Virus record (IMG/VR): IMGVR_UViG_3300025098_000012
Location: 1-64,000 of that record
DNA: 64,000 nucleotides
Direction: 5' to 3' (one strand)
In this document: piece by piece, positions 3,614-49,581 of the stretch
How the letters are laid out: each line of letters begins with the position of its first letter
Position numbering within the stretch: position 1 is the stretch's first letter
Notes under the pieces: generated by a model
What the model was told of the DNA's origin: nothing
Seen by the model: the letters and a program-made list of their open reading frames with translations, nothing else
The model's database searches: none
Program-made: the position numbers and the translations under genes

Positions 3614-3670
3614 GGTTGATTCCTTCAGTTAAGGGTTGTTTGCATTATACTGACCATAATAAATAAAGTA

Positions 3671-13607: not shown

Positions 13608-13666
13608 GTTATCACCAGTAGTCTAGTGGTTATTTACTAGACTACCGATGATAAATAAACTAACGA

Positions 13667-15997: not shown

Positions 15998-16058
15998 ATA
16001 TATCTCTCTCTCTTTCCGATAGTTTACAAGAGAGATATGAATATAAATAAACTAACGA

Positions 16059-18626: not shown

Positions 18627-19499
18627 ATGAATAGAATAACTAAGGGTTTACAGTACCCTATTAGGAGTGGTGCGAGTACCCACTTCGACATGATGTTTGG
18701 AGTGTCAGCAGACGACCACTTCGACTTGATCTTCTCATATTTACAACCCAAAAAGGCAAAGCCTGTTGAGGTAGTGCGTAATGAGACTGAAAATTGGCTC
18801 TATGACGCACGATGTGAGAACTATGAGCGTGTGCTTGAGATGGTTCAGAGAAGAACCCCTTACAACAAGCGTTTCACGCTACCAGAGGATCAGATCGTAA
18901 GCTACTTCCATAGCTTCCTTACCGAACACTTCATCGAGAAAAATCAGCTCAAAAAAGAGCTTGATAAAGGCAAGACGGTGAAGCCATCGGTGGTCTATGA
19001 GTGGTTCTTGCAGTATGTGGTGCGTGAAAAGTACCAAGAAGGTCAAGATGCTCTCCAACGGACTCGTGGTGCGAGGACTCAATCAGAGGTGAATAAAATC
19101 AAGGCTTACGAGACAAAGCAGACTACGACCCCTTATGCTCCTGTCCATCATATCCAAAACCTTGAGTCAGAAGGTTGGCAGGTTGCTCAAGTGGTTTCCA
19201 AGACCGACTCTGAAACAGGTGTGCAAGTGGGAGAACCCGACTACTATGTAGATGGTGATACTCACAGTAGCGTTGAGGAGCGTTCGGAAAATGCGTACAT
19301 GAAAGAGCTGTTGCTTGATCGCTTTGGTAAAGACAAACTGAATATGTACTACTCGCTGTGGCTTGAGCTTCGCTATGATGAATACGAGAGCAAGAGGATG
19401 TGGGCTTCGGCTCGTAAGGTGTCATATAAAGTCTTGAATGCTCAAATCACTCAAGTCCGAGAGGTCTTTAAGGATAACCTAGAAGCCTTCGGTCATTGA
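18627..19499 (+). CDS. Possible divergent sigma-factor-like/HTH transcription protein
   Basis: Helical region-2-like segment (EDQIVSYFHSFLTEHF...VVYEWFLQYVVREKY) and C-terminal HTH-like segment (KRMWASARKVSYKVLNAQITQVREVF); SD GGAG. The ORF looks real; function is weakly supported. Confidence 0.35.
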   Translation: MNRITKGLQYPIRSGASTHFDMMFGVSADDHFDLIFSYLQPKKAKPVEVVRNETENWLYDARCENYERVLEMVQRRTPYNKRFTLPEDQIVSYFHSFLTEHFIEKNQLKKELDKGKTVKPSVVYEWFLQYVVREKYQEGQDALQRTRGARTQSEVNKIKAYETKQTTTPYAPVHHIQNLESEGWQVAQVVSKTDSETGVQVGEPDYYVDGDTHSSVEERSENAYMKELLLDRFGKDKLNMYYSLWLELRYDEYESKRMWASARKVSYKVLNAQITQVREVFKDNLEAFGH

Positions 19500-20818: not shown

Positions 20819-20878
20819 GTTTTTACCTCGCTTCGATTTTTCAATAAAGCGAGGCGATAAAGAAACTATTAAGCTCTC

Positions 20879-24674: not shown

Positions 24675-25067
24675 TCAATGCTGAAGCATTGAGAGGGGGA
24701 TCTGCTGGATCACTTGGAAGATACACTCTTTAAAGTGTTCGACTACGAACTCTGTGTCGTTTCGTGAACTTGCTGAGGGCTGTATGATGACCACCACATC
24801 ACCGTCAGAGAGGCTGACATTACCACCGACACACTCGCTCTTGGTCAGACCTTGAGCGAGAGCCACAGTAGACTCATGGCGAGGGTTGATAGCGTTGGAG
24901 AAGGTTATGTTCGACCCCATTTCAGCGAGACTGACGATAGCCTTAGCTTGGTCAACATCAATGTTGACTTTGTGGCATAGAGCTTCATCAATTAGCATCC
25001 GATTGCTGAAAGCCGAGCTGAGGATGATTCGTGATGTAGGTGCTTTGAAGATGTTTGCGATTGTCAT
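24675..25067 (-). CDS. DUF1874 / AcrIII-1-like cyclic oligoadenylate ring nuclease candidate
   Basis: RIILSSAFSNRML and NAINPRHESTVALAQGL match the family signatures (YLxNAFSxNML; SxGHxSTxxL); VSLSDGDVVVIIQ follows; SD AAAGGAG. Confidence 0.62.
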   Translation of the reverse strand: MTIANIFKAPTSRIILSSAFSNRMLIDEALCHKVNIDVDQAKAIVSLAEMGSNITFSNAINPRHESTVALAQGLTKSECVGGNVSLSDGDVVVIIQPSASSRNDTEFVVEHFKECIFQVIQQIPLSMLQH

Positions 25068-25112
25068 GTGGTTCTCCTTTCAAGAGAGAGATTGTGTTGA
25101 TGACATAAAGGT

Positions 25113-25128
25113 ATAAATAAGGGGTTAC
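25113..25128 (-). promoter_or_regulatory. Early-type motif copy 1 (GTAACCCCTTATTTAT)
   Basis: 61 nt upstream of the DUF1874-like start; near-identical copies at 35157, 35386 and 36028. Confidence 0.6.
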
Positions 25129-25188
25129 GCTTTGCCTTTTCTCATATAATAAGAGGATGCAAGCTGTACTTATAAGGAGGTGCGACAT

Positions 25189-27918
25189 ATGTTTGCCGAT
25201 ATGCTTGAGTCATTAAGACGACCAAATATACAACCCAAGTTGTGGATGAAAGATTGCGAGTTAATCTTAGGCACAAAGGAAAACCTAGACCAATGTATTG
25301 ATGAGTGTATCAACAGCGTTGCGTATGGGCTTGACCTTGAGACAACAGGTCTTGATAATCGTGTGTTCAACGGACGCACAAGAGATACGATTGTAGGGGT
25401 CTGCTTGTCAGCCCATAAGGATAAGGGGTACTATTTCCCTGTTGGTCATCAAGAGGGTGTGGAACATAACATTCCTTGGAGATTGATGTATCCTGCACTT
25501 GAGCGTCTGCTTGACCTCTCTGTGAAAGCAGAGCCTATATTCCACAACGCCGCTTTTGACCAAGAGTTTTTGGAGTTCAACGAGTACAAGTCGGGTCTTG
25601 GTGAGGAGCGTTGGGACTCATTTGAATGGCACGACACCTATATCATTCAGTATCTCTTGAACCCTCGTGAAAAAGGTGGTCGAGGACTAAAGCATTTAAC
25701 TAATGCCCACCTTGAGCGAGAGATGATTGAGCTATCAGATCTTATGCCCGATGCTCCCGACAAGAACTACTCCAAACTTGATGTGAGTTGGGAACCATGT
25801 GTTTGGTATGCCGCTAGTGATGCAATGTGTACGCTTGGACTATGGGAAGTACTTTATAAGAAGTACACCGAAGCTAAAGAACACACTAACTCGATGTATA
25901 AGTTAGAGCGTATGTGTCTACTTTCAACTCGTTGGATGCACAGAAATCGTGTCTACATTGATCGAGACACAGCCTTAAAGTATAGCCAACAGGGGCAGAA
26001 GCTATGGTTCGACTCTCTGATTGATGTCTATGATGGAGCAAAAGAAATCTTAGGTCGAGACATTACCCCTAACTATGTTCGAGTCCTTAAAGGAGATCTG
26101 AAGGGAGAAAACAAGTTTAACCACATGGAAGTGGAGGGGATGAGCTATAAGACTCGTGTAGACGAAGCTCGTAAAGAAGCCTCTCGACTTTACCCCGATG
26201 AAAAGGGAGTAGTCACTAAGGCTGTGAAGATTATCGGTAAGAGTGTAGGTACAGAGGAGATTGAGTTTCCACTTACTTATGACATCCTATCCCCTCAAAA
26301 GCTCGGCTTGTTATTTAGAGAGTTGAGTGTTCCAGGTCTTAAGGCGAGTGAAAAATCGGGTCAGGTCGTTACTTCCAAAGACATTCTTGAAGAGGTCATT
26401 GAGAAGGCTTCTGATGACTTTCCATTTATGGCTAAGGTTAAGACCTTTCGTGAGCTTGGGAAGGCAATGGGTCAGTATCTCATTCCATTTGTAGAAGATG
26501 TTGGACCAGATGGGACTCTCAAGCCTAAGTTTGATCAGTTTGCCGCTGACACAGGTCGTTTTTCATGTAAGACGAATAGTAAGCCTTGGAAAGTTAAAGA
26601 TGGAGGGTGTCGTGTTCCCTTTCAAGGCATACCTGCTACCTATGACCCAAATAAACCCGAAGCTGTTGCTAAGATGCGTTCTTGTGTGGCTGTGCGTGAT
26701 GACGATTGGTGGTTAGCGGCCATTGATTACGCAGGTGTAGAGCTTCGGCTAGTTACGAACTTGAGTCTTGAGCCTAAGTGGATCAAGGCTTTCTTTGAAT
26801 GTTCAGAATGTGGCACAGCTTACCCACAAGAAATTCAAGAAGACGGATTCGCCAAAGCACCTCCATCTAACTGCGTGAACTGTGGGTCTGATAAGATTGG
26901 AGACTTACATACGATCACAGCAGTTGCGTTTTATGGCGAGGGAGCTAAGAAGCGTGATGATTGGAAAGCGTTAAGAGGTAATGGTAAGGGTTGCAACTTT
27001 GCTTTGTCTTATGGTGGTACAGGTAAGGCTGTTCAGCGTACTATTGGTTGTTCAGCCGAAGAAGCAGATGAGAAGTTCAAGAAGTTTACATCAACTTATA
27101 GTGAACTGACTAAATGGTGGTCTAAGCAACACAACTTTGGTCGTAAGCATGGATATGTAAAGACAGGTATGGGTCGTGTTCAACCATTACCCGACATCAA
27201 GTCTGATGACTTTAGGTTTAAATCCAAAGATGAGCGTAAGGCTGTTAATGGTCCAGTACAGGGTACGAGTGCTGATGTCACCAAGTTGGCGATGAGCTTC
27301 ATCTACCAAGAGACTAAGAAGCGTGGTTGGCAAGATAAACTGATGATGATCTTGACCGTCCATGACGAAATCGTGTTCGAGATCCATAAGTCGATCTTGA
27401 AAGAGGCGATTGATATGATCTCCGAGATGATGACTCGCAACAAAGTGATTAAGCGTCTAGGTTGGCGAGTGCCTTTACTTGTCGATGTTGAGCTTGGTAA
27501 GGATTGGACTGTTCCTTTTGATGTGAAAGATGTGATTGCAGGAGAAGCAGGGGATAAGGTCATTAACGCTAAGTACAAGTGCAAGGATTGTGGTGAAAAG
27601 ACTCCTCGTGACCCTAAACCGACTGCGTGTATGCACTGTGGTTCGACTAACATTAAAATTGATTACAAAGATGACTTCATTGCCAAGATCAAGAAGCAGA
27701 CGGAACAACTTTATGCCGACTATGGGGTAAATCCCGATGAAGTTGTCAAAGAGGTGGTTGTAGAAGACCCTGTTGAGAAATCGTCCGATAAGCCCACCTT
27801 TTGTGTTGAGGGACTGACGGAAGAAATCGCAAAAAACCTGTCCGATTGGATTAAATCGCAAGATGGTGAGTATGATGTGGTATATGAAGGACGGAGTATT
27901 ATTGCATTATTAGAATGA
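25189..27918 (+). CDS. polA: Family A DNA polymerase with 3'-5' exonuclease and two zinc-ribbon insertions
   Basis: Exo motifs DLETTG, HNAAFD, YAASD; polymerase motifs A (IDYAGVELR), B (RGNGKGCNFALSYG), C (TVHDEIV). ATG 25189 has AAGGAGG 8 nt upstream (the track uses GTG 25180). Confidence 0.96.
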   Translation: MFADMLESLRRPNIQPKLWMKDCELILGTKENLDQCIDECINSVAYGLDLETTGLDNRVFNGRTRDTIVGVCLSAHKDKGYYFPVGHQEGVEHNIPWRLMYPALERLLDLSVKAEPIFHNAAFDQEFLEFNEYKSGLGEERWDSFEWHDTYIIQYLLNPREKGGRGLKHLTNAHLEREMIELSDLMPDAPDKNYSKLDVSWEPCVWYAASDAMCTLGLWEVLYKKYTEAKEHTNSMYKLERMCLLSTRWMHRNRVYIDRDTALKYSQQGQKLWFDSLIDVYDGAKEILGRDITPNYVRVLKGDLKGENKFNHMEVEGMSYKTRVDEARKEASRLYPDEKGVVTKAVKIIGKSVGTEEIEFPLTYDILSPQKLGLLFRELSVPGLKASEKSGQVVTSKDILEEVIEKASDDFPFMAKVKTFRELGKAMGQYLIPFVEDVGPDGTLKPKFDQFAADTGRFSCKTNSKPWKVKDGGCRVPFQGIPATYDPNKPEAVAKMRSCVAVRDDDWWLAAIDYAGVELRLVTNLSLEPKWIKAFFECSECGTAYPQEIQEDGFAKAPPSNCVNCGSDKIGDLHTITAVAFYGEGAKKRDDWKALRGNGKGCNFALSYGGTGKAVQRTIGCSAEEADEKFKKFTSTYSELTKWWSKQHNFGRKHGYVKTGMGRVQPLPDIKSDDFRFKSKDERKAVNGPVQGTSADVTKLAMSFIYQETKKRGWQDKLMMILTVHDEIVFEIHKSILKEAIDMISEMMTRNKVIKRLGWRVPLLVDVELGKDWTVPFDVKDVIAGEAGDKVINAKYKCKDCGEKTPRDPKPTACMHCGSTNIKIDYKDDFIAKIKKQTEQLYADYGVNPDEVVKEVVVEDPVEKSSDKPTFCVEGLTEEIAKNLSDWIKSQDGEYDVVYEGRSIIALLE

Positions 27919-27928
27919 GAGTAAGCAT

Positions 27929-28516
27929 ATGAAGCCCAATAAAGATTTCTTTTTAGAGTGTAATGAGGGTGGGTTAATGAGTCCACCAGAGTTTGAACGC
28001 ACTTTTTGTAATCAATGTAAGAACCGACAATGTGTTCGAGCTGATTGGGCTTTTAGCACTTGGGATAAGCGTATCCTTACTCAAGTAGATCGCTTATTAA
28101 CAAACCCTAACATCGTACTTCAAGCAGAAGCGAGTCGATGGGAAGGTGTTTCAGACTTTGAGGGTTTTCAAGAGCCACAAGAGATAGAGGTGTGGGGTGT
28201 CCCTCAAGAACCACAAGCACCTTTGATTGTAGATGATGAGGAAGATACAATCCCTGCTCCTCCTGTAGAACCTCCAGAGATTGAAGAGGAAGAAGATGCT
28301 GTGGTAACCTCAGCACCTAAGATCGACTTACAGCCTCAGCCGATACCTCAACCACAGGTGTATCATAACCCTTTGAATACACCTCCACAAGAAATCACGA
28401 TAGGTGAAGCACCTAAGCCTGCTCAAACACAGTCTCGCCCTAAGAGGTTTCAAGAAGACCCCTGGGCAGTTTCTGAAACGCTACCTGTAGGTGGCAAGTT
28501 TAAGATGGGGAAGTAA
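27929..28516 (+). CDS. Hypothetical protein: Cys-cluster N-terminus, Pro/Glu-rich disordered C-half
   Basis: CNQCKNRQC motif; PAPPVEPPEIEEEED linker. Confidence 0.7.
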   Translation: MKPNKDFFLECNEGGLMSPPEFERTFCNQCKNRQCVRADWAFSTWDKRILTQVDRLLTNPNIVLQAEASRWEGVSDFEGFQEPQEIEVWGVPQEPQAPLIVDDEEDTIPAPPVEPPEIEEEEDAVVTSAPKIDLQPQPIPQPQVYHNPLNTPPQEITIGEAPKPAQTQSRPKRFQEDPWAVSETLPVGGKFKMGK

Positions 28517-28518
28517 GT

Positions 28519-28722
28519 ATGATAGAGCTAGTAATATGTAAACACATCCGTAATGGGTACAAAGTCGTTTTACCTAAAAGCATGAATGTAAAGGTCTTAC
28601 CTAAATACACTAAAGGGATTGTATCTAGCCCATCCGAGTTGAAGCCTAATGATAAGATTAAGTTTGTAGGGTGGGTGTCAGCTTCAAATGATGATCGTTC
28701 ATTATGGCGAGATTATCTTTGA
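28519..28722 (+). CDS. Small hypothetical protein
   Basis: Fills the gap in a tightly packed operon. Confidence 0.45.
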   Translation: MIELVICKHIRNGYKVVLPKSMNVKVLPKYTKGIVSSPSELKPNDKIKFVGWVSASNDDRSLWRDYL

Positions 28723-29072
28723 AATATGAGCGTCTTGTTAAGCCATCTAAAGTCCTTCCTCCCGACCTTATAAGAGGCTATTATGAACAAGACCTTAAGA
28801 GTATTAAAGAGATCGAGGCTTGGCTCTCTAAGAATGGGTTGACCATATTATTTACGCTTGGGGAAGCCTACGGAAATGAGAGTGTTTATTTAGGTGAAGA
28901 TAGTCGTGTCTATATAGGAACTGAAAAGATCCCTCGCATTGACTGGTTAAAGAAACAGATCTTAAGAGTAAGTACAGAGCTTTTACAACAAGCGATTAGA
29001 GAGGGTTGGACTCGCAAAAAAATGTTTGAAGTGCTTAAAAAAAGGTCTGAAGAAGAGAACAAGATAGTATAA
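28704..29072 (+). CDS. Hypothetical protein
   Basis: 122-aa ORF in the polymerase operon. Confidence 0.6.
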   Translation: MARLSLKYERLVKPSKVLPPDLIRGYYEQDLKSIKEIEAWLSKNGLTILFTLGEAYGNESVYLGEDSRVYIGTEKIPRIDWLKKQILRVSTELLQQAIREGWTRKKMFEVLKKRSEEENKIV

Positions 29073-29134
29073 TGAGCGTGTTGAGTGGGCGATCCACTCA
29101 TAAACTCAAACCATACACAACAGGAGAAATCACT

Positions 29135-29323
29135 ATGAGTGGTATCGCTGATCGTATTGCAAATCTAAAGCAACTTCTCACTGACCTTGAGTCAGACGCA
29201 ACCAAGACAGACAGTGGTAATAAGGCCGCAGGTACTCGTGTTCGTAAGACACTTCAAGAAGTGGTCAACGAGTCTAAAGAGATCCGTAAGGCTGTCATCG
29301 AGGCTCGTAATAGCGACAGCTAA
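29135..29323 (+). CDS. Histone H1-like nucleoid protein (Hc1 family)
   Basis: Signature GNKAAGTRVRK within a helical hairpin; ATG 29135 follows AGGAG (in frame with track ORF 29072). Confidence 0.8.
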   Translation: MSGIADRIANLKQLLTDLESDATKTDSGNKAAGTRVRKTLQEVVNESKEIRKAVIEARNSDS

Positions 29324-29338
29324 TCGAACCTCTATACA

Positions 29339-29355
29339 ACACACACACACACACA
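29339..29355 (+). repeat. (AC)8A dinucleotide microsatellite
   Basis: ACACACACACACACACA just upstream of the SD of 29371-29679. Confidence 0.9.
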
Positions 29356-29370
29356 GAAAGGACATGACCT

Positions 29371-29679
29371 ATGTCTAACTTAAAAGGCGATCTAGCCCCT
29401 AAGCCAAATAAGACACCTTATGAGCTTCGGCTTGAGATTTTACATCTCGCTCAACACATCGTTGAAGACAATGTTGAAAAACAAATTCAGTATATGCACT
29501 CACAAGGCGACATTGCAGGTAGCTTTTATGATCGTCATGAAGATACGATTGGTGTAGCTGCCGCTGAGTTGATTGCCTCAGCGAAAGAAAACATTGAGGG
29601 TTTGAAAATGCCCCCAATGGGGGTTGACGAAGTTTTGAGTATTGCGAAAAAGTTAAATAACTTTGTCTCCAATGGGTGA
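29371..29679 (+). CDS. Phage hypothetical protein (KTPYELRLEIL motif)
   Basis: N-terminal PYE(L/I)RL motif of a kind I recall from myovirus hypotheticals; last gene before a terminator. Confidence 0.65.
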   Translation: MSNLKGDLAPKPNKTPYELRLEILHLAQHIVEDNVEKQIQYMHSQGDIAGSFYDRHEDTIGVAAAELIASAKENIEGLKMPPMGVDEVLSIAKKLNNFVSNG

Positions 29680-29717
29680 CAAGTCATATAACTAAAGCAT
29701 ATTCATTTGTGTCGGAG

Positions 29718-29756
29718 AAACCCTCGATTGCCCCAGTGGTGGTCGGGGGTTTTTCT
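29718..29756. terminator. Probable (bidirectional) intrinsic terminator
   Basis: AAACCCTCGATTGCC-loop-GGTGGTCGGGGGTTTTTT stem with G-U pairs and a U tract, between convergent genes. Confidence 0.7.
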
Positions 29757-30113
29757 TTAGAGGTCGCAGAACTGACCCCACCAATCAGTATAGGTGACTT
29801 TGACCACATTAGATTTCTCGATGTGCCTTCGGCAATACTTACAAGGTCGAGCCATTGTCATCGTACCGTCTTTGAGAAATCTAATGACCTCAAGGCGATC
29901 TCCTTTTTGAGTATGCCTAAGAGCATCCATTTCAGCGTGTAGGTTGGAAACGAGAGTTCCGTCTTTAACCCTCCGAGCAAACCTTAAGTCTGTCTTGCTT
30001 GAGTTTACACCGATGTAAACAGGCTTCTTTTTTCTGAATACAATACAAGCGACATGGTACTTTTCACCATTAGACAATGCCATTCTCATAGCTTGTTTAT
30101 AAATGCGTTTCAT
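29757..30113 (-). CDS. Zinc-dependent cytidine/dCMP deaminase-fold protein
   Basis: HAEMDAL and RPCKYC motifs; YIGVN. Confidence 0.85.
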   Translation of the reverse strand: MKRIYKQAMRMALSNGEKYHVACIVFRKKKPVYIGVNSSKTDLRFARRVKDGTLVSNLHAEMDALRHTQKGDRLEVIRFLKDGTMTMARPCKYCRRHIEKSNVVKVTYTDWWGQFCDL

Positions 30114-30182
30114 AATAGGAGGTACATTATGTGTTATTATGACCCGATACTTTTGATGTGTATATGCGAGATTATTGAAGAG

Positions 30183-30611
30183 CTACTTGTAGTTTGATTT
30201 ATCGAGAGCGTCCTCTAAGGCTTTCGCATTGAAGCCATAGTCGTGATACTTTTTAAGGACTCTCCAAAGATACTCTTCTTCTGGAGATATGAGATTTTTG
30301 TTCTCGGTGTAATAGACATGGGCTGTTACATATTCACCATTATCACACATGACATCCATGATTGAACAAGAACACCCTTCAAATGGTTCGGGTAGCTCCC
30401 AATGATCTACGGTATAGAGGACACCCTCTAAGTAGTCGTTCATCTTCCCTGCTATCATAGAGCAGAAGCCTTGCTCCCCTTCGCTTTTGTTCGAGAAGAT
30501 CAGTTTGAACCCTCTAATCATTGCAAACTTATAAAATCGTGCTGATGGGTATTGATCGACCATAGTGTGTTCTTCGAGGCTTAATCCGTAAGCAAAGTAG
30601 AGTGCTTTCAT
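30183..30611 (-). CDS. Gamma-glutamylcyclotransferase (AIG2-like)
   Basis: LYFAYGLSL, LEGVLY, FEG, AHVYY, PEEEYL; start ATG 30611 after GAAAGGA (track start 30662). Confidence 0.8.
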   Translation of the reverse strand: MKALYFAYGLSLEEHTMVDQYPSARFYKFAMIRGFKLIFSNKSEGEQGFCSMIAGKMNDYLEGVLYTVDHWELPEPFEGCSCSIMDVMCDNGEYVTAHVYYTENKNLISPEEEYLWRVLKKYHDYGFNAKALEDALDKSNYK

Positions 30612-30622
30612 CGCATTTCCTT

Positions 30623-30943
30623 TCAGTGATGAACGACAAGGGCTGCCGCTCCGCATAGACAAAGTGCTAAAACACCTTTCCAGTTAAACCCGAAAAAGTA
30701 GCAGTTAAGAATAAGGTCTACAGTTAAGCTACACAATCCCCAAGTAACTCCTGCTTTCCACACATCACCCATTTCAATAAGTTTCCACCAAGCGTACAGG
30801 GTCATATAGTTGGTGAACAAGCTCGTGTAGAGCCACCATTTAAATGGCGACCAATCGAACCCATAAATGACTTTGGCATTTCCTTTGAACCAAAACACTA
30901 TATTAGCGAGGCATAACAGACCCACAGGGATGATATAATTCAT
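30623..30943 (-). CDS. Small four-TM membrane protein (SMR/DMT-like)
   Basis: Four hydrophobic segments in 106 aa. Confidence 0.55.
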   Translation of the reverse strand: MNYIIPVGLLCLANIVFWFKGNAKVIYGFDWSPFKWWLYTSLFTNYMTLYAWWKLIEMGDVWKAGVTWGLCSLTVDLILNCYFFGFNWKGVLALCLCGAAALVVHH

Positions 30944-31450
30944 TTAATGCACCAGACAGTCTACTTCAAAATCGTACCCCAAGAAAGAGGGTACAATCTG
31001 ATGTGGGTCTGTTAACAGTGAAGGTTCTGATTGAAAATCTATGTCCGATAGAAATCCCTCGAACCCTTCTCCTTTAAAGTAAGACATCCCAAAAATTGAC
31101 TGTTCTCCACTCCTGCTATCTTCAATCAAGCACCAAAAAACGAAACCTATACTTTTTTCTTCTTCGTACATTTTTTGATGTGCTATAAAAGACCAAAATT
31201 CAGGATTAACATCTTGCAGGATTTCTGGTAAAGAGAATCCGAGCATAACTTTATTATGAAGTAAATCATCACCTGTCATAATAGACAAATGAGGAGGTAA
31301 AGTAGATACATCAAGACCGTAATCTCTAGCACCCGTTACCGTTGTGCTTATCATGTTATAGGCTTCGTTATGAAAGTCAAAAGGGGAAATGTTCATGTCA
31401 ACTCCATTAAGATCTGCTAGGTCTATCCAACAAAAACTCCTCACAAGCAA
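30944..31450 (-). CDS. Hypothetical protein
   Basis: AT-rich ORF; true start probably ATG ~31396 after GGAG. Confidence 0.55.
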   Translation of the reverse strand: MLVRSFCWIDLADLNGVDMNISPFDFHNEAYNMISTTVTGARDYGLDVSTLPPHLSIMTGDDLLHNKVMLGFSLPEILQDVNPEFWSFIAHQKMYEEEKSIGFVFWCLIEDSRSGEQSIFGMSYFKGEGFEGFLSDIDFQSEPSLLTDPHQIVPSFLGYDFEVDCLVH

Positions 31451-31649
31451 GGAAGCTATCAGATCAGTTATTTCTTATTGTACTTATAGAAAAGACGATA
31501 GGGTATGCTCCGATAAAGATTTAGCGAAAAAACTCAAGCAAGTAGATCGAGAGATTGGTAGATTACTAGAGTATGTTCAATCCTTAGAGGGTCAAACTCG
31601 AAGAACACTGCGAGAAGAACGACTTAAAAAAGAAAGAGAGAATAGATAA
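31389..31649 (+). CDS. Small coiled-coil hypothetical protein
   Basis: Coupled (TAATG) to the FmdB-like gene. Confidence 0.5.
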   Translation: MFMSTPLRSARSIQQKLLTSKEAIRSVISYCTYRKDDRVCSDKDLAKKLKQVDREIGRLLEYVQSLEGQTRRTLREERLKKERENR

Positions 31650-31831
31650 TGCCTACTTATAACTACAGATGCAAAAACGAAGAGTGTAAACATGAGTTTC
31701 AAGCGATGCACAAGATGAGCGACCCACCACCCCCATGCCCTAAATGTAGTGGTGAACAGGTTGAGAAGCTGATAAAGGGTATGAACTTTGTCTTAAAAGG
31801 TAGTGGATGGTTCAATTCTGGTGGATACTGA
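31649..31831 (+). CDS. FmdB-family zinc-ribbon protein
   Basis: MPTYNYRC...C...PCPKC...VEKLI...FVLKGSGWF. Confidence 0.9.
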   Translation: MPTYNYRCKNEECKHEFQAMHKMSDPPPPCPKCSGEQVEKLIKGMNFVLKGSGWFNSGGY

Positions 31832-32111
31832 TCTGCTTAAGTCTCTTGTCAACCATCCCAAATGGGTATGGCAAATGGGCCTGCTAGGTTTCCCCTACTT
31901 TAAACCGACACAGAGGGTTAGGAAGATAGGAGTTGGGGATGACTCTTGGCTTCCTGCTTTAGATGATCCTGTGACTCTCGGCTACTTACACCACCTGTAT
32001 GTAATCAATAATGGGTCTGTAAGGCGAGATGGTGAGCTATGGGTAAGCTCACATGGGGTTGAGGGAAAAGACTTAGCAGATGTGCTTGTAGAGTCTTTCC
32101 TCAAACTTTAA
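31803..32111 (+). CDS. Hypothetical protein
   Basis: Overlaps the FmdB-like gene; protein-like composition. Confidence 0.55.
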   Translation: MDGSILVDTDLLKSLVNHPKWVWQMGLLGFPYFKPTQRVRKIGVGDDSWLPALDDPVTLGYLHHLYVINNGSVRRDGELWVSSHGVEGKDLADVLVESFLKL

Positions 32112-32115
32112 TAGT

Positions 32116-32442
32116 TTAAAATCTAGGTTCTCTACCTCGACACCACTTAGACTGTTCCTCTGTCCAATAGAGCCTAGCCTTACCACGCTTCTTCTTTAGA
32201 GCCATTTCAGCTTTCATGGCTTCTGATCTGTTAGCGTATGGACCATAGGTACACATTAACACCCAAGGTCGGTGCTTTGATGTGTACTTAGCACCACCTT
32301 TGATTTCTCCCTGGTGCTGTCTCAGCCTACGGTTAACATCTGTAGTGCAACCCACATAGAAAAAACCTGGTAGTTGTTTACCTGTCTTAGCTGATCTTCT
32401 CATCTGCTGACTCTGAATAACATATACGACCCATTCGCTCAT
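32116..32442 (-). CDS. GIY-YIG endonuclease (SLX1/YhbQ-like)
   Basis: WVVYVI...FYVGCTTDVNRRLRQH.G..KGGAKYT...RPW...EAMKAE; start ATG 32442 after AAGGA (track start 32550). Confidence 0.9.
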   Translation of the reverse strand: MSEWVVYVIQSQQMRRSAKTGKQLPGFFYVGCTTDVNRRLRQHQGEIKGGAKYTSKHRPWVLMCTYGPYANRSEAMKAEMALKKKRGKARLYWTEEQSKWCRGREPRF

Positions 32443-32469
32443 TTGTAGTTCCTTTATACACTGCTTTAG

Positions 32470-32949
32470 GTGATCTATTATACTAAAGGAAATATGATGA
32501 GAAATCATAACAAGATGGCAAGTCGAGTTGCATATCGCTACATGAAACAAGCAGGTCTATTGAGTAAGATCGTAGATTTCTTTACCGAGAGTCCTCGTGA
32601 GAAAGAGAAGAAGCCTGTGTTTGATGTCGCTAAAGTCTGGGTGACAGCAGGTATCTATGGGGCTACTATGGGTTGGGTATCAAAGACTCTTAAGCTCAAA
32701 GGCAAAGATACTGCGATCATTGACTACAAAGGGGATAATCTCAAGCTCTCCATCTCACAAGAACGAGTTAGGGGGATGAAGGACAATGGGGGCATCAAAG
32801 GAGACTTCTTTGTAGTGATTTCTTTGACTGGTGTTGATAAGAACATACCTAAGAGTCAGTTAGATAAAGTCTTAGCAGGTATTCTTAGAGAGGTTCGGCT
32901 TGAACCCGACTTTACCGAAACTCCTGTTGAACACCCCAATATGCGTTAG
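32470..32949 (+). CDS. Small basic protein with RVAYRYMKQA leader
   Basis: Leader shared with the 19900/20879/21409 genes; likely ATG ~32494. Confidence 0.7.
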   Translation: MIYYTKGNMMRNHNKMASRVAYRYMKQAGLLSKIVDFFTESPREKEKKPVFDVAKVWVTAGIYGATMGWVSKTLKLKGKDTAIIDYKGDNLKLSISQERVRGMKDNGGIKGDFFVVISLTGVDKNIPKSQLDKVLAGILREVRLEPDFTETPVEHPNMR

Positions 32950-33545
32950 ACCTCTAAGCTCACTCCAAAGAGCCGACCCTCTGATACCCTGTCGATCTTA
33001 ATTGACTTCATTCCTTGCAGGTTCAGTGACTCTGTGGACAGCTCACCAATCGTGAGGCTTGACCCTTTAGTGAGGGTGAACATTAGACCCCCGATGTTCA
33101 CCTCTTTAGTGCTTGTATCAGTAGGCTCTTGTGGTGAGAGGAGTACAGGTTCTTCGCTAGAGGATGCCTCACCACCTTCCATGATGTTATACATCTGATC
33201 CCTAAACTTCTTTGGAAGCTCACAACCGTACAACCCTTTGAGGTGGTAGTTGAGCTGATTGACCGATTTAAACTTGTGGCATACCATCTTTGAGTATTTG
33301 AGGATTGAGGTATGGATGAGGTCTTTCTCCTCTCCCACAGCACCCCTCTGAGAAGCGTACTTACGGATAGACATAAGTGCTTTCACAAAGACCTCTTTAC
33401 TGAGGACACCTGTTGCTAGATAGTTCTTGCGATGCTTGAGAGTCCAAATGTGCGTGGAGTCTACAACATCTTTTTGACCATGATTAAGGTCGAGGTATTT
33501 CATTGGTTCATTTAAGAGGAGGCAAGCCTCTGAGGATAGGTTCAT
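32946..33545 (-). CDS. Hypothetical protein
   Basis: 199-aa ORF; its C-terminal beta segment resembles that of 33548-34786. Confidence 0.65.
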   Translation of the reverse strand: MNLSSEACLLLNEPMKYLDLNHGQKDVVDSTHIWTLKHRKNYLATGVLSKEVFVKALMSIRKYASQRGAVGEEKDLIHTSILKYSKMVCHKFKSVNQLNYHLKGLYGCELPKKFRDQMYNIMEGGEASSSEEPVLLSPQEPTDTSTKEVNIGGLMFTLTKGSSLTIGELSTESLNLQGMKSIKIDRVSEGRLFGVSLEV

Positions 33546-33547
33546 GT

Positions 33548-34786
33548 TTAACCTTTCTTGATCTTAACCCCATACAGGGTGTTGTTTTCAATGCGATCTA
33601 CTTCGAGGTTGATGCCACCATAGATGTGGACTCCCCCTTCAATCTGTACCTCCCCAATACAGATCACATTGTCGTTGGGAGTGAGTTTAAGAGTACCGAG
33701 CAGGACATAAGGCTCTGCCGATGATTGTTCTTCATTTGAGACAAGAGGCTCAACAGGAGGTTGCTCCACTTCCACTTTGGGGATTGGGTTTTGAGCCATT
33801 AAGTCATCGCATTCCTCTTGAGTCATAGGTACGACCATGTTCTCCTCTGCTGTGGCTTCAATGACAGCAACAAAGCTATCTTCTCGCTCTTGCCTGTTCT
33901 TCTTAGCCTTCTTTGGACGACCAGGCTTTGGGAAGTGTTCCTCAATAACCTCTAAGGTTTCAGCCGACAAGTTATCAAGGCTCAAGCCAAAGATCAGTTT
34001 CAAAGCGTAGTTGAGGTTGTTCTTAGCTGTAAAGTCTCGTAGGTTCGTTCCTAGATAAGCATCTCGCACCCATTGATCAGCGATCATCTTTACTTGACCT
34101 CGACCTAAGCTATCCTCTTTGAAAGACTTAAAGACATCAAGGAGTTTGATGTACGGAGACTTGCCTTTATTGACCATATGGAGAGGTTGAAGGGTTGCCT
34201 TTCGACCTTCGAGCGATGCTACACGATTGAGCATATTCCGAGTTTCCTCTGAACTCTCTTTGGAGTAGCTGACCCAAAGTCGATCCCACTTGGAGATCAT
34301 TTTTTTCTTGCCCTCTCGAACCCAAGGCATACGCTCATAGGCATCTTTACCGTTAAACACACCCTCATCTTCCATGCCGAGAAGGGGTAATATGAAGGTG
34401 TGTTCGCCTAGAAACTCGTTCCAAGTCTCATAAAGGTCAAGCTCCTCTTGAGTGGTATCGAGGTCGGTGTTTATTGGTAGCTGATAACAGTGTCGTATGT
34501 CTGTTTCTGCGATAGCTGTCTTATGACTGCACTCGATAAACTTGACATTGGACTTAGTAGCCTCTTGTCTAGCCCAGTTTCTTAAACTGTGGTTGCAGTT
34601 GGATTTGAGAACCAACACTAAGTCAGTGTTAGATGGGATGTTCTCTCTTCGATCTGCCGACTGATCCCAAGTCTTGTGGTTGCTGATGATGAGCTTTAGC
34701 TCTTTGCCGAAACGCTTGTTAAGACGCTCAACAAACTTAGAGGCGAACTTAGACTCGCCACCTATAACGAATGTGTTTTGTTGCAT
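33548..34786 (-). CDS. Protein with N-terminal DUF2325-like alpha/beta domain
   Basis: VIGG...IPSNTDLVLVLKSNCNHSLRNWARQEA...VKFIEC pattern; SD AAAGGAG. Confidence 0.55.
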   Translation of the reverse strand: MQQNTFVIGGESKFASKFVERLNKRFGKELKLIISNHKTWDQSADRRENIPSNTDLVLVLKSNCNHSLRNWARQEATKSNVKFIECSHKTAIAETDIRHCYQLPINTDLDTTQEELDLYETWNEFLGEHTFILPLLGMEDEGVFNGKDAYERMPWVREGKKKMISKWDRLWVSYSKESSEETRNMLNRVASLEGRKATLQPLHMVNKGKSPYIKLLDVFKSFKEDSLGRGQVKMIADQWVRDAYLGTNLRDFTAKNNLNYALKLIFGLSLDNLSAETLEVIEEHFPKPGRPKKAKKNRQEREDSFVAVIEATAEENMVVPMTQEECDDLMAQNPIPKVEVEQPPVEPLVSNEEQSSAEPYVLLGTLKLTPNDNVICIGEVQIEGGVHIYGGINLEVDRIENNTLYGVKIKKG

Positions 34787-34826
34787 AATACTCCTTTCGA
34801 GAGTCGTTGAAGGTAAGGTACTTATA

Positions 34827-35105
34827 TTATTCGGACTCGATTACTGCCGAACATTTGCTCGCAAACACCGACCTTCCGTCTGTGGTCAAGAACTTCCACA
34901 CACCCGACCTGTACACACTAGCGTTTGTAGGGTGTCGGAGGGTCTGAAAGTTGACCCACCCATTCGGCATCTCGCACGAGATGGTGTAGACCTTACCTGC
35001 TTCGACCGAAGTCGATGGTTTGGTTTCGAGATGGTTCTCGTATTGTGGGCTTCTTCCACAGCCCACAGCGAGTAAGGCTAAGAGTGTAAAAGTAAGGGCT
35101 TTCAT
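34827..35105 (-). CDS. Small lipoprotein
   Basis: Signal peptide MKALTFTLLALLAVG-C with lipobox; two further Cys. Confidence 0.75.
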   Translation of the reverse strand: MKALTFTLLALLAVGCGRSPQYENHLETKPSTSVEAGKVYTISCEMPNGWVNFQTLRHPTNASVYRSGVWKFLTTDGRSVFASKCSAVIESE

Positions 35106-35156
35106 GTATAATGTCCTTTCAAGACTATTAAGAGCAAGATCGCTCGATACTAGACG

Positions 35157-35172
35157 ATAGATAAGGGGTTAC
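35157..35172 (-). promoter_or_regulatory. Early-type motif copy 2
   Basis: GTAACCCCTTATCTAT, 67 nt upstream of the lipoprotein ATG. Confidence 0.6.
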
Positions 35173-35174
35173 CC

Positions 35175-35408
35175 ATGTATTATGTTCAGAATAAATCTAC
35201 AGGACAACCACTCTACTACACGCATAAAGGCAAGGTAGAGAAGGTCTATTCGCTACGCATCGTGGCAGAAATCGAAGCCGAGAAGGTGGATCAAGCAACT
35301 CACTTAAAGACAGCTAGGGTTGATGTCGTTGAGTTATCTAAGTCAGCTCGTCTATATATGGAGAATCAATCAAGAATGTGTGGTTGTAACCCCTTATCTA
35401 GCACTTAG
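35175..35408 (+). CDS. Small hypothetical protein
   Basis: AAGGGG 7 nt upstream of ATG; protein-like sequence. Confidence 0.5.
   Translation: MYYVQNKSTGQPLYYTHKGKVEKVYSLRIVAEIEAEKVDQATHLKTARVDVVELSKSARLYMENQSRMCGCNPLSST
35386..35400 (+). promoter_or_regulatory. Early-type motif copy 3
   Basis: GTAACCCCTTATCTA, 73 nt upstream of ATG 35459. Confidence 0.6.
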
Positions 35409-35458
35409 TGTCGAGGGCAATGAAGCCCACCAACTTCCACTCCACTAAGGAGAACGAA

Positions 35459-36016
35459 ATGACAGCAACCCCAACATACATCATCGGTGATCCATGCTAC
35501 TCTCTGCACACAGTTGAGGCAGAGGGTACTCCACACTCTGAGGGTCTTTGGGTCAAGAGCTTCTGCGAGGCTCTTTGGTCTGCTCAAGAAACAGAGGACT
35601 TTGACGGACACTTCACCTACATGGGTCATCCCATCTTTGTGCATAGCACAGCGTATGGTGATGGTCAGTATGAGGGTAGTGATGGTCGATCTTACTCTGT
35701 TGACGCAGGGATCATCGGGGCAATCCCTGTGGATCTGATCGAAGATGAGGTCGCTCAAGAGATGCTCAAACAACCTTATGTCCGAACAGTGAGCATGACC
35801 AAGAGTCAGCTTAGTAAGGCTGACTACTATGATGGTACTTTCACCTTCCACACAAGCGAGGGTCGCCTTGAGATCGAGACTGATCCAGAGGAGGAGTACG
35901 AGTGCGAGGACTGTGGCTCAGAGATCAGCGAGTACGAGTACAACGATGATGGTGTCTGTAAGTGGTGTCGAGCTGACCGAGAGGAGCAGGAGCGAGAGGA
36001 GAAAGATGAGGACTAA
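35459..36016 (+). CDS. Acidic phage hypothetical protein (IGDPCY motif, C-terminal CxxC...CxxC)
   Basis: YIIGDPCY; CEDCG...CKWC; SD AAGGAG before ATG 35459 (track start 35408). Confidence 0.75.
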   Translation: MTATPTYIIGDPCYSLHTVEAEGTPHSEGLWVKSFCEALWSAQETEDFDGHFTYMGHPIFVHSTAYGDGQYEGSDGRSYSVDAGIIGAIPVDLIEDEVAQEMLKQPYVRTVSMTKSQLSKADYYDGTFTFHTSEGRLEIETDPEEEYECEDCGSEISEYEYNDDGVCKWCRADREEQEREEKDED

Positions 36017-36027
36017 GGGAGGAAACC

Positions 36028-36043
36028 GTAACCCCTTATCTAT
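36028..36043 (+). promoter_or_regulatory. Early-type motif copy 4
   Basis: GTAACCCCTTATCTAT, 67 nt upstream of ATG 36095. Confidence 0.6.
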
Positions 36044-36094
36044 AACCTTACATGAGGAATGAACCTCACCAACTACTCTTACAAGGAGAACAAT

Positions 36095-36487
36095 ATGAGC
36101 ATGGCTTGGGATCACTATCGTGAAGTAATGGCTGACAATGGGTACTTTGATGACGATGGACTCGTTCGTGGTCATCTCGCTGACAATGGGTATTACTACG
36201 AGGACGGTTATTGGGTATCCACCTTTGTTAACAAAGTGGTGGTCGCTCGTAAAGATCACCCGAAGTTCGGGGTCGTCAAGGGCGAGAAGCATCGCTTCAT
36301 CAAGACTAAGTACATCTGTGATGAGACAGGTTGTAGCTCTTGGGAGGTACAGCGTAAGACTCTTGGAGTGGTTGTAAATATAACCCCAAGAGAGGATCCA
36401 GCTCCTGTCAAGTCAAGTTGGGGAACACCACCTACGACACCGAACCTTTGGAACACCCGAAGTTGGTTTCAAAAAGAGGACAAATAA
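36095..36487 (+). CDS. Hypothetical protein
   Basis: SD AAGGAG before ATG 36095 (track start 36059); internal duplicated ADNGYF/HLADNGYY. Confidence 0.7.
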   Translation: MSMAWDHYREVMADNGYFDDDGLVRGHLADNGYYYEDGYWVSTFVNKVVVARKDHPKFGVVKGEKHRFIKTKYICDETGCSSWEVQRKTLGVVVNITPREDPAPVKSSWGTPPTTPNLWNTRSWFQKEDK

Positions 36488-37525: not shown

Positions 37526-37573
37526 ATTTTACTCCTTACTTACATTATATGAGATTAGAAGAATGGAGTCTGT

Positions 37574-46150: not shown

Positions 46151-46249
46151 AGTCTTGCTGACCTCCTTTGGTTATTCCATTATATGAATGAGGGGTCAAC
46201 AAGATACAGATTAGTATAAACAGACCAAGAAAAACCACAGGAGTAAATT

Positions 46250-49546: not shown

Positions 49547-49581
49547 ATAGTTTGTTTATAGTCCGACTATAAATGAATAAC
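49547..49581. promoter_or_regulatory. Back-to-back late-type motifs around a short palindrome
   Basis: ATAGTTTGTTTAT (+, 49547-49559) and GTTATTCATTTAT (-, 49569-49581) flank TTATAGTC-C-GACTATAA between divergent genes. Confidence 0.55.

What the first reader, a model, noticed from the sequence alone, without database searches (positions are those of the whole stretch)
25113..36095. Second motif class GTAACCCCTTAT(C/T)TA heads small accessory-gene cassettes at near-fixed spacing
Seen: four near-identical copies (25113-25128 minus, 35157-35172 minus, 35386-35400 plus, 36028-36043 plus), 61-73 nt before the next ATG. Copies 3 and 4 also share a downstream leader (GAGG..AATGAA.C.CACCAACT...AAGGAGAAC). 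A degenerate GACCCCTCATTCATAT at ~46182-46197 precedes the helicase/modification operon. Inference: a non-sigma70 early promoter or activator site, duplicated as a portable expression cassette that may also seed recombination and gene shuffling. It controls the Acr candidate and the lipoprotein.
Basis: partly seen in the sequence, partly recalled or inferred. Interest (0 to 1): 0.6.

Follow-up and report, generated by a model that had tools for sequence, protein, structure and literature searches.

The report
Huge-phage promoter heading swappable gene cassettes
The repeated GTAACCCCTTATYTA word is almost certainly the promoter core of a small expression cassette that an uncultured marine huge phage places before some 40 non-structural genes, and close relatives differ by swaps, flips and gains of these cassettes.

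Summary
The window holds four exact copies at the stated places (0.24 expected), and the 226.7-kb phage contig holds 42. All 42 point at the next gene, 40 are intergenic, and 38 lie 24-94 nt before a start codon. The full core is 17 nt, YGTAACCCCTTATYTAT, with no -35 element. It is followed by a cassette: a GC hairpin at a fixed place in 48 of 101 copies, a CA-rich leader, a CTCY anti-Shine-Dalgarno word and AAGGAGAAC.

A 375-kb relative has 59 copies. At 26 orthologous sites the core is 94% identical against 73-80% for the flanks. Between the two genomes cassettes are swapped in order, inverted, or present in one only.

A more distant relative (DNA polymerase 69% identical) lacks the word. 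It carries its own conserved motif before homologues of the same genes.

I read the word as a clade-specific promoter inside a portable expression cassette, closest in concept to the PeSL cassettes of T4-type phages but not sigma-70-like.

"Early" timing and the polymerase or factor that reads it are inferred only, because no RNA data exist. The "Acr" label has no support. The "degenerate" site at 46.2 kb belongs to another motif class, TCATATAA.

The parts
25112..25129 (-). Class A core, copy 1 (YGTAACCCCTTATTTAT). It heads the 130-aa gene 24675-25067.
   Evidence: The homologous gene in G003 carries the G003-type motif instead.
25068..25111 (-). Leader of copy 1. It has no GC hairpin. It holds the anti-SD CTCTT (25082-25086) and the SD AAGGAGAAC (25071-25079).
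25142..25149 (+). Class C motif TCATATAA, 39 nt before the DNA polymerase gene. It stands back to back with copy 1.
35156..35173 (-). Class A core, copy 2. It heads the 92-aa lipobox protein gene 34827-35105.
   Evidence: The orthologous site in G001 is 278902(-).
35132..35145 (-). Leader hairpin of copy 2 (GAGCG-ATCT-TGCTC).
35175..35408 (+). Real 77-aa gene lying between the divergent copies 2 and 3. Copy 3 sits in its last codons.
   Evidence: 19 of 28 differences from G001 fall at third codon positions.
35385..35402 (+). Class A core, copy 3. It heads the 185-aa gene 35459-36016.
   Evidence: The orthologous site in G001 is 279118(+).
35415..35428 (+). Leader hairpin of copy 3 (GGGC-AATGAA-GCCC). 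It is followed by CACCAACTTCCACTCC (anti-SD CTCC at 35440-35443) and the SD at 35447-35455.
   Evidence: About 57 nt of promoter plus leader are shared with the unlinked copy at G000 165514(-).
36027..36044 (+). Class A core, copy 4. It heads the 130-aa gene 36095-36487.
36053..36068 (+). Leader hairpin of copy 4 (TGAGG-AATGAA-CCTCA). Downstream lie the anti-SD CTCT (36076-36079) and the SD (36083-36091).
46180..46197 (-). It is a class C motif TCATATAA preceded by GACCCCTCAT, 29 nt before the 234-aa gene that opens the DnaB-helicase operon.
   Evidence: Helicase call.
18637..18651 (-). Two-mismatch match (GTAAACCCTTAGTTA), 187 nt before the 796-aa gene. Membership is doubtful.

Best explanation
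The word is the core of a clade-specific promoter, which I call class A: YGTAACCCCTTATYTAT, 17 contiguous near-invariant bases with no -35 element. The phage is an uncultured marine huge phage.

The core is the first module of a 45-75-nt expression cassette:
- the core;
- a transcription start about 5-10 nt downstream (inferred; a semi-conserved T.GTRT lies there);
- in about half the copies, a GC-rich hairpin whose sequence varies but whose place is fixed, probably a stabiliser at the 5' end of the RNA (inferred);
- a G-poor, CA-rich leader;
- a CTCY word that can pair with the Shine-Dalgarno sequence;
- AAGGAGAAC;
- ATG.

The cassette heads about 40 mostly unrelated non-structural genes. Of the 42 copies, 26 lie in one 27-kb region of poorly conserved genes.

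The same 15-60 nt recur on both strands, so they act as patches of homology. At these patches cassettes have been reordered, inverted, gained and lost between close relatives.

The reading enzyme is not identified. The most likely candidate is the host RNA polymerase steered by a phage-specified factor. That factor would read GTAACCCC next to an A/T-rich TATYTAT element that resembles a -10.
For: Shown:
- There are 42 copies against 0 for the reversed control.
- All 42 are co-oriented with the next gene, 40 of 42 are intergenic, and 38 of 42 lie 24-94 nt before a start codon. Paired copies occupy divergent junctions at 35158-/35386+, 84814-/84894+, 94892-/94983+, 101508-/101590+, 104741-/104764+ and 150844-/150912+.
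- High information is confined to positions 0-17, and nothing upstream is conserved.
- Sigma-70-like sites are not enriched: 24 found against 27 expected.
- G001 has 59 copies. In 26 orthologous pairs the core is 94% identical, against 73% upstream and 80% downstream.
- G003 (median protein identity 53%) lacks the word. It carries its own multi-copy motif before homologues of the genes headed by 8 of the 11 class A copies that have a homologue there.
- Hairpins are present in 48 of 101 copies, against 10.1 in shuffles (maximum 17) and 5 of 82 after class B. There are 30 different stem arms, and most hairpins (40 of 48) start at positions 23-31.
- CTCY stands before the SD in 26 of 34 headed genes (2.5 expected), against 10 of 140 other genes.
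- The 40 headed genes include only 2 paralogous pairs, and unlinked copies share a leader.
- Cassette events against G001: g109 and g110 are swapped in order; g121 is inverted across a divergent junction; g086-g087, g111 and g130 are present only in G000.
- Ten intergenic ends of homology fall within 5 nt of a copy, against 1.6 expected and a maximum of 8 in 1000 samples.
- The headed genes that match a Pfam family are non-structural: an SNF2 helicase, an AAA_5 plus VWA pair, and a CNNM/CBS protein.
Against: - No transcript data exist. No public RNA run holds this DNA, so no start site has been seen.
- The timing class is a guess from gene content.
- No RNA polymerase gene and no sigma region 2 were found in G000 or in the complete G001. 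Only helix-turn-helix proteins were found. No reader of the word can be named.
- The excess of homology ends at copies is partly expected for any conserved island inside diverged intergenic DNA. Class B shows a smaller excess too (7 ends within 5 nt).
- Only about half of the copies have the hairpin.
Confidence: 0.8

Rival explanations
1. The conserved left half, GTAACCCC(TTA), is the binding site of a phage activator or repressor (a MotA-box-like operator). Only the right half, TATYTAT or TCATATAA, is the polymerase element. On this reading the word is a regulator site fused to a minimal promoter, not one recognition unit.
For: - Hybrid sites join GTAACCCCTTA(A/T) to the class C word TCATATAA, at G000 178306 and at G001 265146, 336082, 215450 and 357607.
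- Orthologous sites switch between the two right halves (84104 against 336094; 104764 against 357595).
- Classes A and B share the frame xTAA-NNNN-TTATYTAT and differ in the middle four bases.
- The phage encodes multi-HTH proteins of 143 aa and 249 aa and a 188-aa protein with a sigma region 4-like domain.
Against: - No binding was tested.
- The two halves abut with fixed spacing in 42 of 42 copies, as in one recognition unit.
- The 249-aa HTH protein is not conserved in G001.
- This reading overlaps with the best explanation rather than excluding it.
Confidence: 0.3
2. The word is read by an unrecognised phage-encoded RNA polymerase, as a T7-type contiguous promoter that ends in TATA just before the start site.
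For: - The core is 17 contiguous near-invariant bases ending in TATA, with no -35 element.
- A sister class differs in a 4-base block, as T7 and T3 promoters do (the T7/T3 comparison is from memory).
- Large ORFans of 3037 aa and 2181 aa have no assigned function.
Against: - Pfam RNA_pol (T7 type) and the RNA polymerase beta domain are absent from G000 and from the 100%-complete G001. The T7-family control rang in no control genome, so that absence is weak.
- No ORF of at least 500 aa in G000 has T7-like motifs B and C, and none of at least 400 aa in G000 or G001 shows the multisubunit NADFDGD motif.
- The base after TATA is not conserved.
- The 3037-aa ORFan gave only weak leads to virion muzzle or nozzle proteins.
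Confidence: 0.15
3. The word is mainly a recombination site for mobile mini-cassettes (attC-like or homing-like), and its position before genes is secondary.
For: Ends of homology, an order swap and an inversion all coincide with copies.
Against: - Orientation towards the downstream gene is strict, and the distance to the SD is constrained.
- Copies occupy both sides of divergent junctions where a promoter is required.
- A different promoter-like motif takes its place before homologous genes in G003.
- No recombinase was looked for or seen beside the copies.
Confidence: 0.05

Closest known systems
PeSL (promoter-early stem-loop) cassettes of T4-type phages (Arbiol et al. 2010, PMC2839356; Comeau et al. 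2014, PMC4122927)
   Same: - Dozens of copies of a short composite regulatory cassette.
- They sit mostly in plastic regions before genes of unknown function.
- They run from the promoter to the SD and start codon.
- They include a G/C stem-loop.
- Insertions, deletions and replacements between close relatives have their ends at the cassettes (for the PeSL description; here).
   Different: - PeSL promoters match the E. coli sigma-70 consensus with an AT-rich upstream region. Here there is no -35 element and no TATAAT.
- PeSL stem-loops lie within or upstream of the promoter, or just before the start site, and act as terminators. Here the hairpin lies 8-16 nt downstream of the core and no U-tract was seen after it.
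- The CTCY anti-SD word is an added module.
- Mini-circles were not testable.
Promoters of single-subunit phage RNA polymerases (T7, T3, SP6)
   Same: A contiguous core of about 17 nt and very high information that ends in TATA. A sister class differs in a short internal block.
   Different: No cognate polymerase gene was detected. The position after TATA is not a conserved G. The comparison with T7 and T3 sequences is from memory, not a test.
T4 middle and late promoters (MotA box; gp55 TATAAATA)
   Same: Promoter classes that lack a normal -35 element and depend on phage factors. One phage has several classes: A, B (TTAATAGTTTATTTAT, before structural genes) and C (TCATATAA, before replication genes).
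   Different: The sequences differ. TATAAATA appears only on the opposite strand of the T-variant. No gp55, MotA or AsiA homologue was identified.
Stabilising stem-loops at the 5' end of bacterial mRNAs (ompA type)
   Same: A stem-loop close to the inferred 5' end, with no conserved sequence but a conserved position.
   Different: The 5' end itself is not mapped here, and function is inferred from position only. A lambda nut boxB-like role is not excluded.

Membership tests
PeSL cassettes of T4-type phages | Promoter identical to the sigma-70 consensus (-35 and -10) with an AT-rich upstream region | tested here: not met
   The logo shows no conservation upstream of position 0 and no TATAAT. 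The sigma-70 scan found 24 sites against 27 expected, none at the copies.
PeSL cassettes of T4-type phages | A stable G/C stem-loop inside the cassette that acts as terminator or attenuator | tested here: inconclusive
   A GC hairpin is present in 48 of 101 copies, but downstream of the core and without a U-tract. Only 13-19 of 101 copies have an upstream GGGG(T) that could pair with the core's CCCC. Terminator activity was not testable.
PeSL cassettes of T4-type phages | Concentration in hyperplastic regions, before ORFans | tested here: met
   26 of 42 copies lie in 82-109 kb. Only 11 of 51 genes there have a G003 homologue, against 139 of 231 elsewhere. Most headed genes match no family.
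PeSL cassettes of T4-type phages | Insertions, deletions, replacements and rearrangements between close relatives have their ends at the cassettes | tested here: met
   An order swap, an inversion and cassettes present in one genome only. Ten ends lie within 5 nt of a copy, against 1.6 expected.
PeSL cassettes of T4-type phages | Formation of packaged mini-circles | not testable with these tools
   This needs phage DNA. The contig joints seen are explained by paralogous copies.
Sigma-70-type bacterial promoter | TTGACA-like -35, a spacer of 16-18 nt, and a TATAAT-like -10 with A at position 2 and T at position 6 | tested here: not met
T7-type single-subunit RNA polymerase promoter | A cognate single-subunit RNA polymerase gene in the phage | tested here: not met
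   PF00940 is absent from G000 and G001, but the control rang nowhere, so the test is weak. The motif B and C regex found nothing in G000.
T7-type single-subunit RNA polymerase promoter | A contiguous conserved core of about 17-23 bp ending at the start site, with a conserved +1 purine | tested here: inconclusive
   The 17-nt core ending in TATA is met. The next base is A16, C4, G12, T10. The start site is not mapped.
T4 late promoter (gp55) | TATAAATA on the non-template strand at -10 | tested here: not met
   In the direction of the genes the word reads TTATYTATA.
Phage N4 virion-polymerase promoter | A conserved DNA hairpin (5-7 bp stem, 3-nt loop) upstream of the start site | tested here: not met
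   The core holds only TAA/TTA arms. The GC hairpin lies downstream of the core and varies in sequence.

The most novel reading that the evidence does not exclude
The phage clade carries its own, so far unrecognised, promoter-specificity system: a factor or a polymerase. This system reads two sister promoter classes built on one frame, xTAA-NNNN-TTATYTAT. CCCC marks accessory genes and TAGT marks structural genes, so a four-base block would set the temporal class. On this reading the accessory-gene class evolves fast: it is replaced by an unrelated motif in a relative with 69% identical DNA polymerase. The structural-gene class is conserved in that relative.
Probability: 0.25. Interest if true: 0.7.

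Novelty: new variant of a known kind. Interest (0 to 1): 0.5.

Why it matters
Huge phages from metagenomes have almost no mapped regulation. This one word, with its sister classes B and C, gives a draft transcription map for a whole marine clade of phages of up to at least 375 kb. The map needs no culture.

The map marks which genes are accessory and which are structural.

It shows a concrete route by which new genes are plugged in and moved: homologous exchange between repeated promoter-leader cassettes. This was previously documented mainly for T4-type phages.

The core, the hairpin leader and the anti-SD word form a compact natural expression module. It could be tested in marine bacteria.

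The contrast with a relative that uses a different motif before the same genes offers a system to ask how promoter specificity co-evolves with its reader.

Tried and rejected
- RNA evidence. No public RNA run holds the region. Laying DNA contigs of four runs showed only that assemblies break at the copies. The apparent joints (for example 35172 to 36028) come from paralogous copies elsewhere in the genome. They are not used as evidence for recombination.
- Polymerase and sigma hunt. Pfam T7-type RNA polymerase, the RNA polymerase beta domain and sigma region 2 gave no hits. Regexes for DFDGD and for T7 motifs B and C found nothing convincing. The 3037-aa ORFan matched no PHROG, Pfam or PDB entry, and the Atlas gave only weak leads (some searches were size errors). 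The 188-aa protein shows only sigma region 4, so I do not call it a sigma factor.
- ECF-type reading (GTAAC as -35, GTRT as -10). Rejected, because in the short-leader copies the SD would lie upstream of the start site.
- Sigma-70 reading with TAGTRT as the -10. Rejected for the same reason.
- Overlapping upstream terminator (GGGGT pairing with ACCCC). Present in only 13-19 of 101 copies, no more often than before class B.
- Sigma-32-like -10 (CCCCATnT, recalled from memory). There is no CTTGAA -35 element. Kept as a lead only.
- Literature. No paper holds the word GTAACCCCTTAT.
- GenBank phages. There is no near relative. LR745208.1 (DNA polymerase 45.6% identical) has no copies.
- Repeats seen in distant loci. 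L161 holds TTATCCAWTAA on both strands and inside genes. L168 holds a 69-nt coding tandem repeat. Neither is a promoter analogue.
Full report
**What the window is.** The window is the first 64 kb of a 226,698-bp IMG/VR virus contig (G000; CheckV completeness 73%) from marine metagenomes. It encodes a family A DNA polymerase, a DnaB-type helicase, a clamp loader, baseplate and tail proteins and several proteins of 1000 to about 3000 aa. No GenBank phage is close. The best match is the uncultured 485-kb phage LR745208.1, with 45.6% identity over the DNA polymerase. This is an uncultured marine huge phage.

**The observation.** GTAACCCCTTATYTA occurs exactly at 25114-25128(-), 35158-35172(-), 35386-35400(+) and 36028-36042(+). 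With up to 2 mismatches there are 5 matches against 0.24 expected. The distances from motif start to the next ATG are 61, 67, 73 and 67 nt, as reported.

**Scale and placement.**
- The whole contig has 33 exact and 9 one-mismatch copies. The same word read backwards has none.
- I made a simple ORF-based gene call. By it, all 42 copies point at the next gene downstream, whichever strand that gene is on.
- 40 of the 42 copies are intergenic. 38 lie 24-94 nt before a start codon that has a strong Shine-Dalgarno (SD) sequence.
- Copies sit as back-to-back pairs at divergent gene junctions: 35158-/35386+ in the window, and 84814-/84894+, 94892-/94983+, 101508-/101590+, 104741-/104764+ and 150844-/150912+ elsewhere. 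Each arm of such a junction needs its own promoter.
- 26 copies lie between 82 and 109 kb, about one per kilobase.

**Anatomy.**
- The conserved block is 17 nt, YGTAACCCCTTATYTAT, usually followed by A.
- Nothing in the 50 nt upstream is conserved, so there is no -35 element. A weaker T.GTRT.R lies at positions 21-28.
- A sigma-70 consensus scan of 22-38 kb found 24 sites against 27 expected, none at the copies.
- In the 101 copies of G000 plus G001, 48 have a GC-rich hairpin, in most of them (40 of 48) starting at positions 23-31. Shuffled sequences give 10.1 (maximum 17), and class B sites give 5 of 82.
- There are 30 different stem arms at the same place, for example GGGC/GCCC, GAGG/CCTC and GGGGA/TCCCC. 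No U-tract follows the hairpin; a CA-rich leader does.
- 26 of 34 headed genes with a GGAG SD have CTCY 2-6 nt before it, where shuffles give 2.5. Among other genes the figure is 10 of 140. This word can pair with the SD.
- Seven copies have a short leader, with 24-27 nt from motif to ATG and the SD starting about 10 nt after the word. This places the start site no later than about position 25 and rules out readings in which T.GTRT is the -10.

**Other motif classes in the same genome.**
- Class B, tTTaaTAGTTTaTTTATa, has 31 copies at up to 1 mismatch. 23 of them are intergenic and lie 28-60 nt before genes. These genes include those next to baseplate and tail genes, and a family of paralogues that start MRRSASE.
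- Class C, TCATATAA, has 37 copies, 19 of them intergenic and co-oriented. It precedes the DNA polymerase (25142+), the helicase operon (46180-46187-), the DNA helicase gene (48765-48772-) and others.
- Classes A and B align as xTAA|CCCC|TTATYTAT against xTAA|TAGT|TTATTTAT.
- Hybrids GTAACCCCTTA(A/T)TCATATAA exist, and orthologous sites switch between A and the hybrid.

**Close relatives.**
- The word is multi-copy in many IMG/VR contigs that are 75-100% identical in DNA to G000. Single hits in unrelated contigs are at the level expected by chance.
- G001 (375,691 bp, judged 100% complete; median protein identity 86%) has 59 copies.
- In 26 orthologous promoter pairs the 15-nt core is 94% identical. 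The 40 nt upstream are 73% identical and the leader about 80%. This shows purifying selection on the word itself.

**Cassette exchange**.
- Genes g109 and g110, each with its own copy, stand in opposite order in the two genomes.
- g121 with its copy lies on the other strand, across the divergent junction 104741-/104764+.
- The units g087-g086, g111 and g130, each headed by a copy, exist only in G000. G001 has several of its own.
- Ten intergenic ends of blastn homology lie within 5 nt of a copy, against 1.6 expected (maximum 8 in 1000 samples). Class B shows a smaller excess, so part of this effect is simply conserved islands in diverged spacers.
- The 40 headed genes include only two paralogous pairs. 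Even so, unlinked copies share leaders: 35386(+) and 165514(-) share about 57 nt before unrelated genes. The promoter-leader unit therefore moves, or is homogenised, independently of the genes.

**Distant relatives.**
- LR745208.1 and five huge-phage contigs with 43-69% identical DNA polymerase lack the word.
- G003 (290 kb; median protein identity 53%) has its own multi-copy motif: an A-tract, TTATCCCAAG, about 14 nt, then YATTAG. It clusters among small genes and forms divergent pairs.
- Eleven class A copies head a gene that has a G003 homologue. For 8 of them the homologue carries the G003 motif upstream. One is the gene behind window copy 1.
- A class B-like TAGTTTATTTATA and the CA-rich, CACTCC leader style are kept in G003.
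- Two different conserved words before the same genes is what promoters of co-diverging systems look like.

**What reads it.**
- No T7-type polymerase, RNA polymerase beta domain or sigma region 2 was found in G000 or G001.
- Three candidate DNA-binding proteins were found: a 188-aa protein with a sigma region 4 domain next to the clamp loader (58% identical in G003), a 143-aa protein with three HTH domains (37% identical in G003), and a 249-aa protein with five HTH repeats inside the 82-109 kb region.
- My best guess is the host polymerase steered by a phage factor. An unrecognised phage polymerase remains possible. No tool here could decide, and no RNA run holds the region.

**Genes behind the four window copies.**
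- Copy 1 heads a 130-aa protein that matches no family.
- Copy 2 heads a 92-aa protein with a signal peptide and the lipobox LLAVGC.
- Copy 3 heads an acidic 185-aa protein with a C-terminal CxxC...CxxC. It matches only phrog_20074, of unknown function.
- Copy 4 heads a 130-aa protein that matches no family.
- Nothing supports an anti-CRISPR role.
- Larger headed genes elsewhere are an SNF2 helicase, an AAA_5 plus VWA pair and a CNNM/CBS protein. None is structural, which fits an accessory, probably pre-late, class.

**Comparison with what is known.** The closest described system is the PeSL cassette of T4-type phages. These are about 50 copies per genome of a sigma-70 promoter plus stem-loop, lying in hyperplastic regions before ORFans, and they mediate modular shuffling (PMC2839356; PMC4122927). 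The distribution and the shuffling match. The promoter type, the position of the hairpin, the missing U-tract and the anti-SD module do not match. I therefore file this as something that works like a PeSL, not as a member of that family. It is a new variant of a known kind.

**Verdict.** That the word is a promoter core inside a portable cassette is well supported by comparative evidence (0.8). The 'Acr' label and the 'degenerate copy' are not supported.

Noticed in passing
window 3659-3670(-), 13651-13662(-), 16043-16054(-), 20857-20868(-), 49548-49559(+); about 30 copies in G000: A second promoter-like class, tTTaaTAGTTTaTTTATa, lies 28-60 nt before structural-region genes. It shares the frame xTAA-NNNN-TTATYTAT with the studied word. 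A similar TAGTTTATTTATA is kept in the distant relative G003.
   Followed up: partly
window 25142-25149(+), 37545-37552(-), 46180-46187(-), 48765-48772(-); 37 copies in G000: A third class, TCATATAA, stands before the DNA polymerase, helicase and other replication genes. It has no -35 element. It sometimes lies in tandem after a class A copy or is fused to GTAACCCCTTA.
   Followed up: partly
leaders of class A cassettes, e.g. window 35440-35455 and 36076-36091: A CTCY word 2-6 nt before the GGAG of the SD occurs in 26 of 34 class-A-headed genes, against 10 of 140 other genes. It is a possible SD-sequestering mini-hairpin or a nuclease or regulator target. The same style is seen in G003 leaders.
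   Followed up: partly
window 35175-35408(+): A 77-aa gene lies between two divergent promoter copies. It is under purifying selection (19 of 28 changes from G001 fall at third codon positions). Its SD-like AAGGGG is the reverse complement of copy 2, and copy 3 lies in its last codons. A perfect TATAAT at 35108-35113(+) may be its promoter.
   Followed up: partly
G000 220890-221169(-) = L151:10890-11169: One class A copy is followed by about 270 nt without a plausible ORF. The stretch folds unusually well (z = -3.9) and ends in a hairpin just before the next copy. It has no Rfam or tRNA match and is conserved in G001. It is a candidate phage non-coding RNA.
   Followed up: partly
G000 71149-80262(-) (L153:150-9263) and G000 155359-161904(-): A 3037-aa ORFan matches no PHROG, Pfam or PDB entry. 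A 2181-aa protein shows only weak SNF2/DEAD helicase signals. The second lies beside the gene for the 188-aa sigma region 4-like protein and the clamp loader.
   Followed up: partly
G000 88505-89254(-) (L144:8505-9254): A 249-aa protein made of five tandem helix-turn-helix repeats lies inside the promoter-dense region. It has no orthologue at this place in G001.
   Followed up: no
G000 124738, 136421, 153965, 165137, 167861, 212836, 219085 and others: A family of paralogous genes starts MRRSASE. Each is preceded by class B and a nearly identical leader (ACCCTATCAATAAGTGATCTCTTTAACC...). The family and a leader of the same style also exist in G003.
   Followed up: no
window 37.5-43.6 kb: Tandem paralogous genes (two of 401 aa and their neighbours) give multiple cross-matches to several places in G001.
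   Followed up: no
G003 (L176-L190): The quasi-palindromic word TTATCCAWTAA is strongly over-represented on both strands and inside genes of G003. It is not promoter-like. It may be a binding or modification site.
   Followed up: no
L168:557-1100: A 69-nt tandem repeat with a coding-looking periodicity (TCTTGAGCGTTATGG recurs) lies in a distant relative.
   Followed up: no
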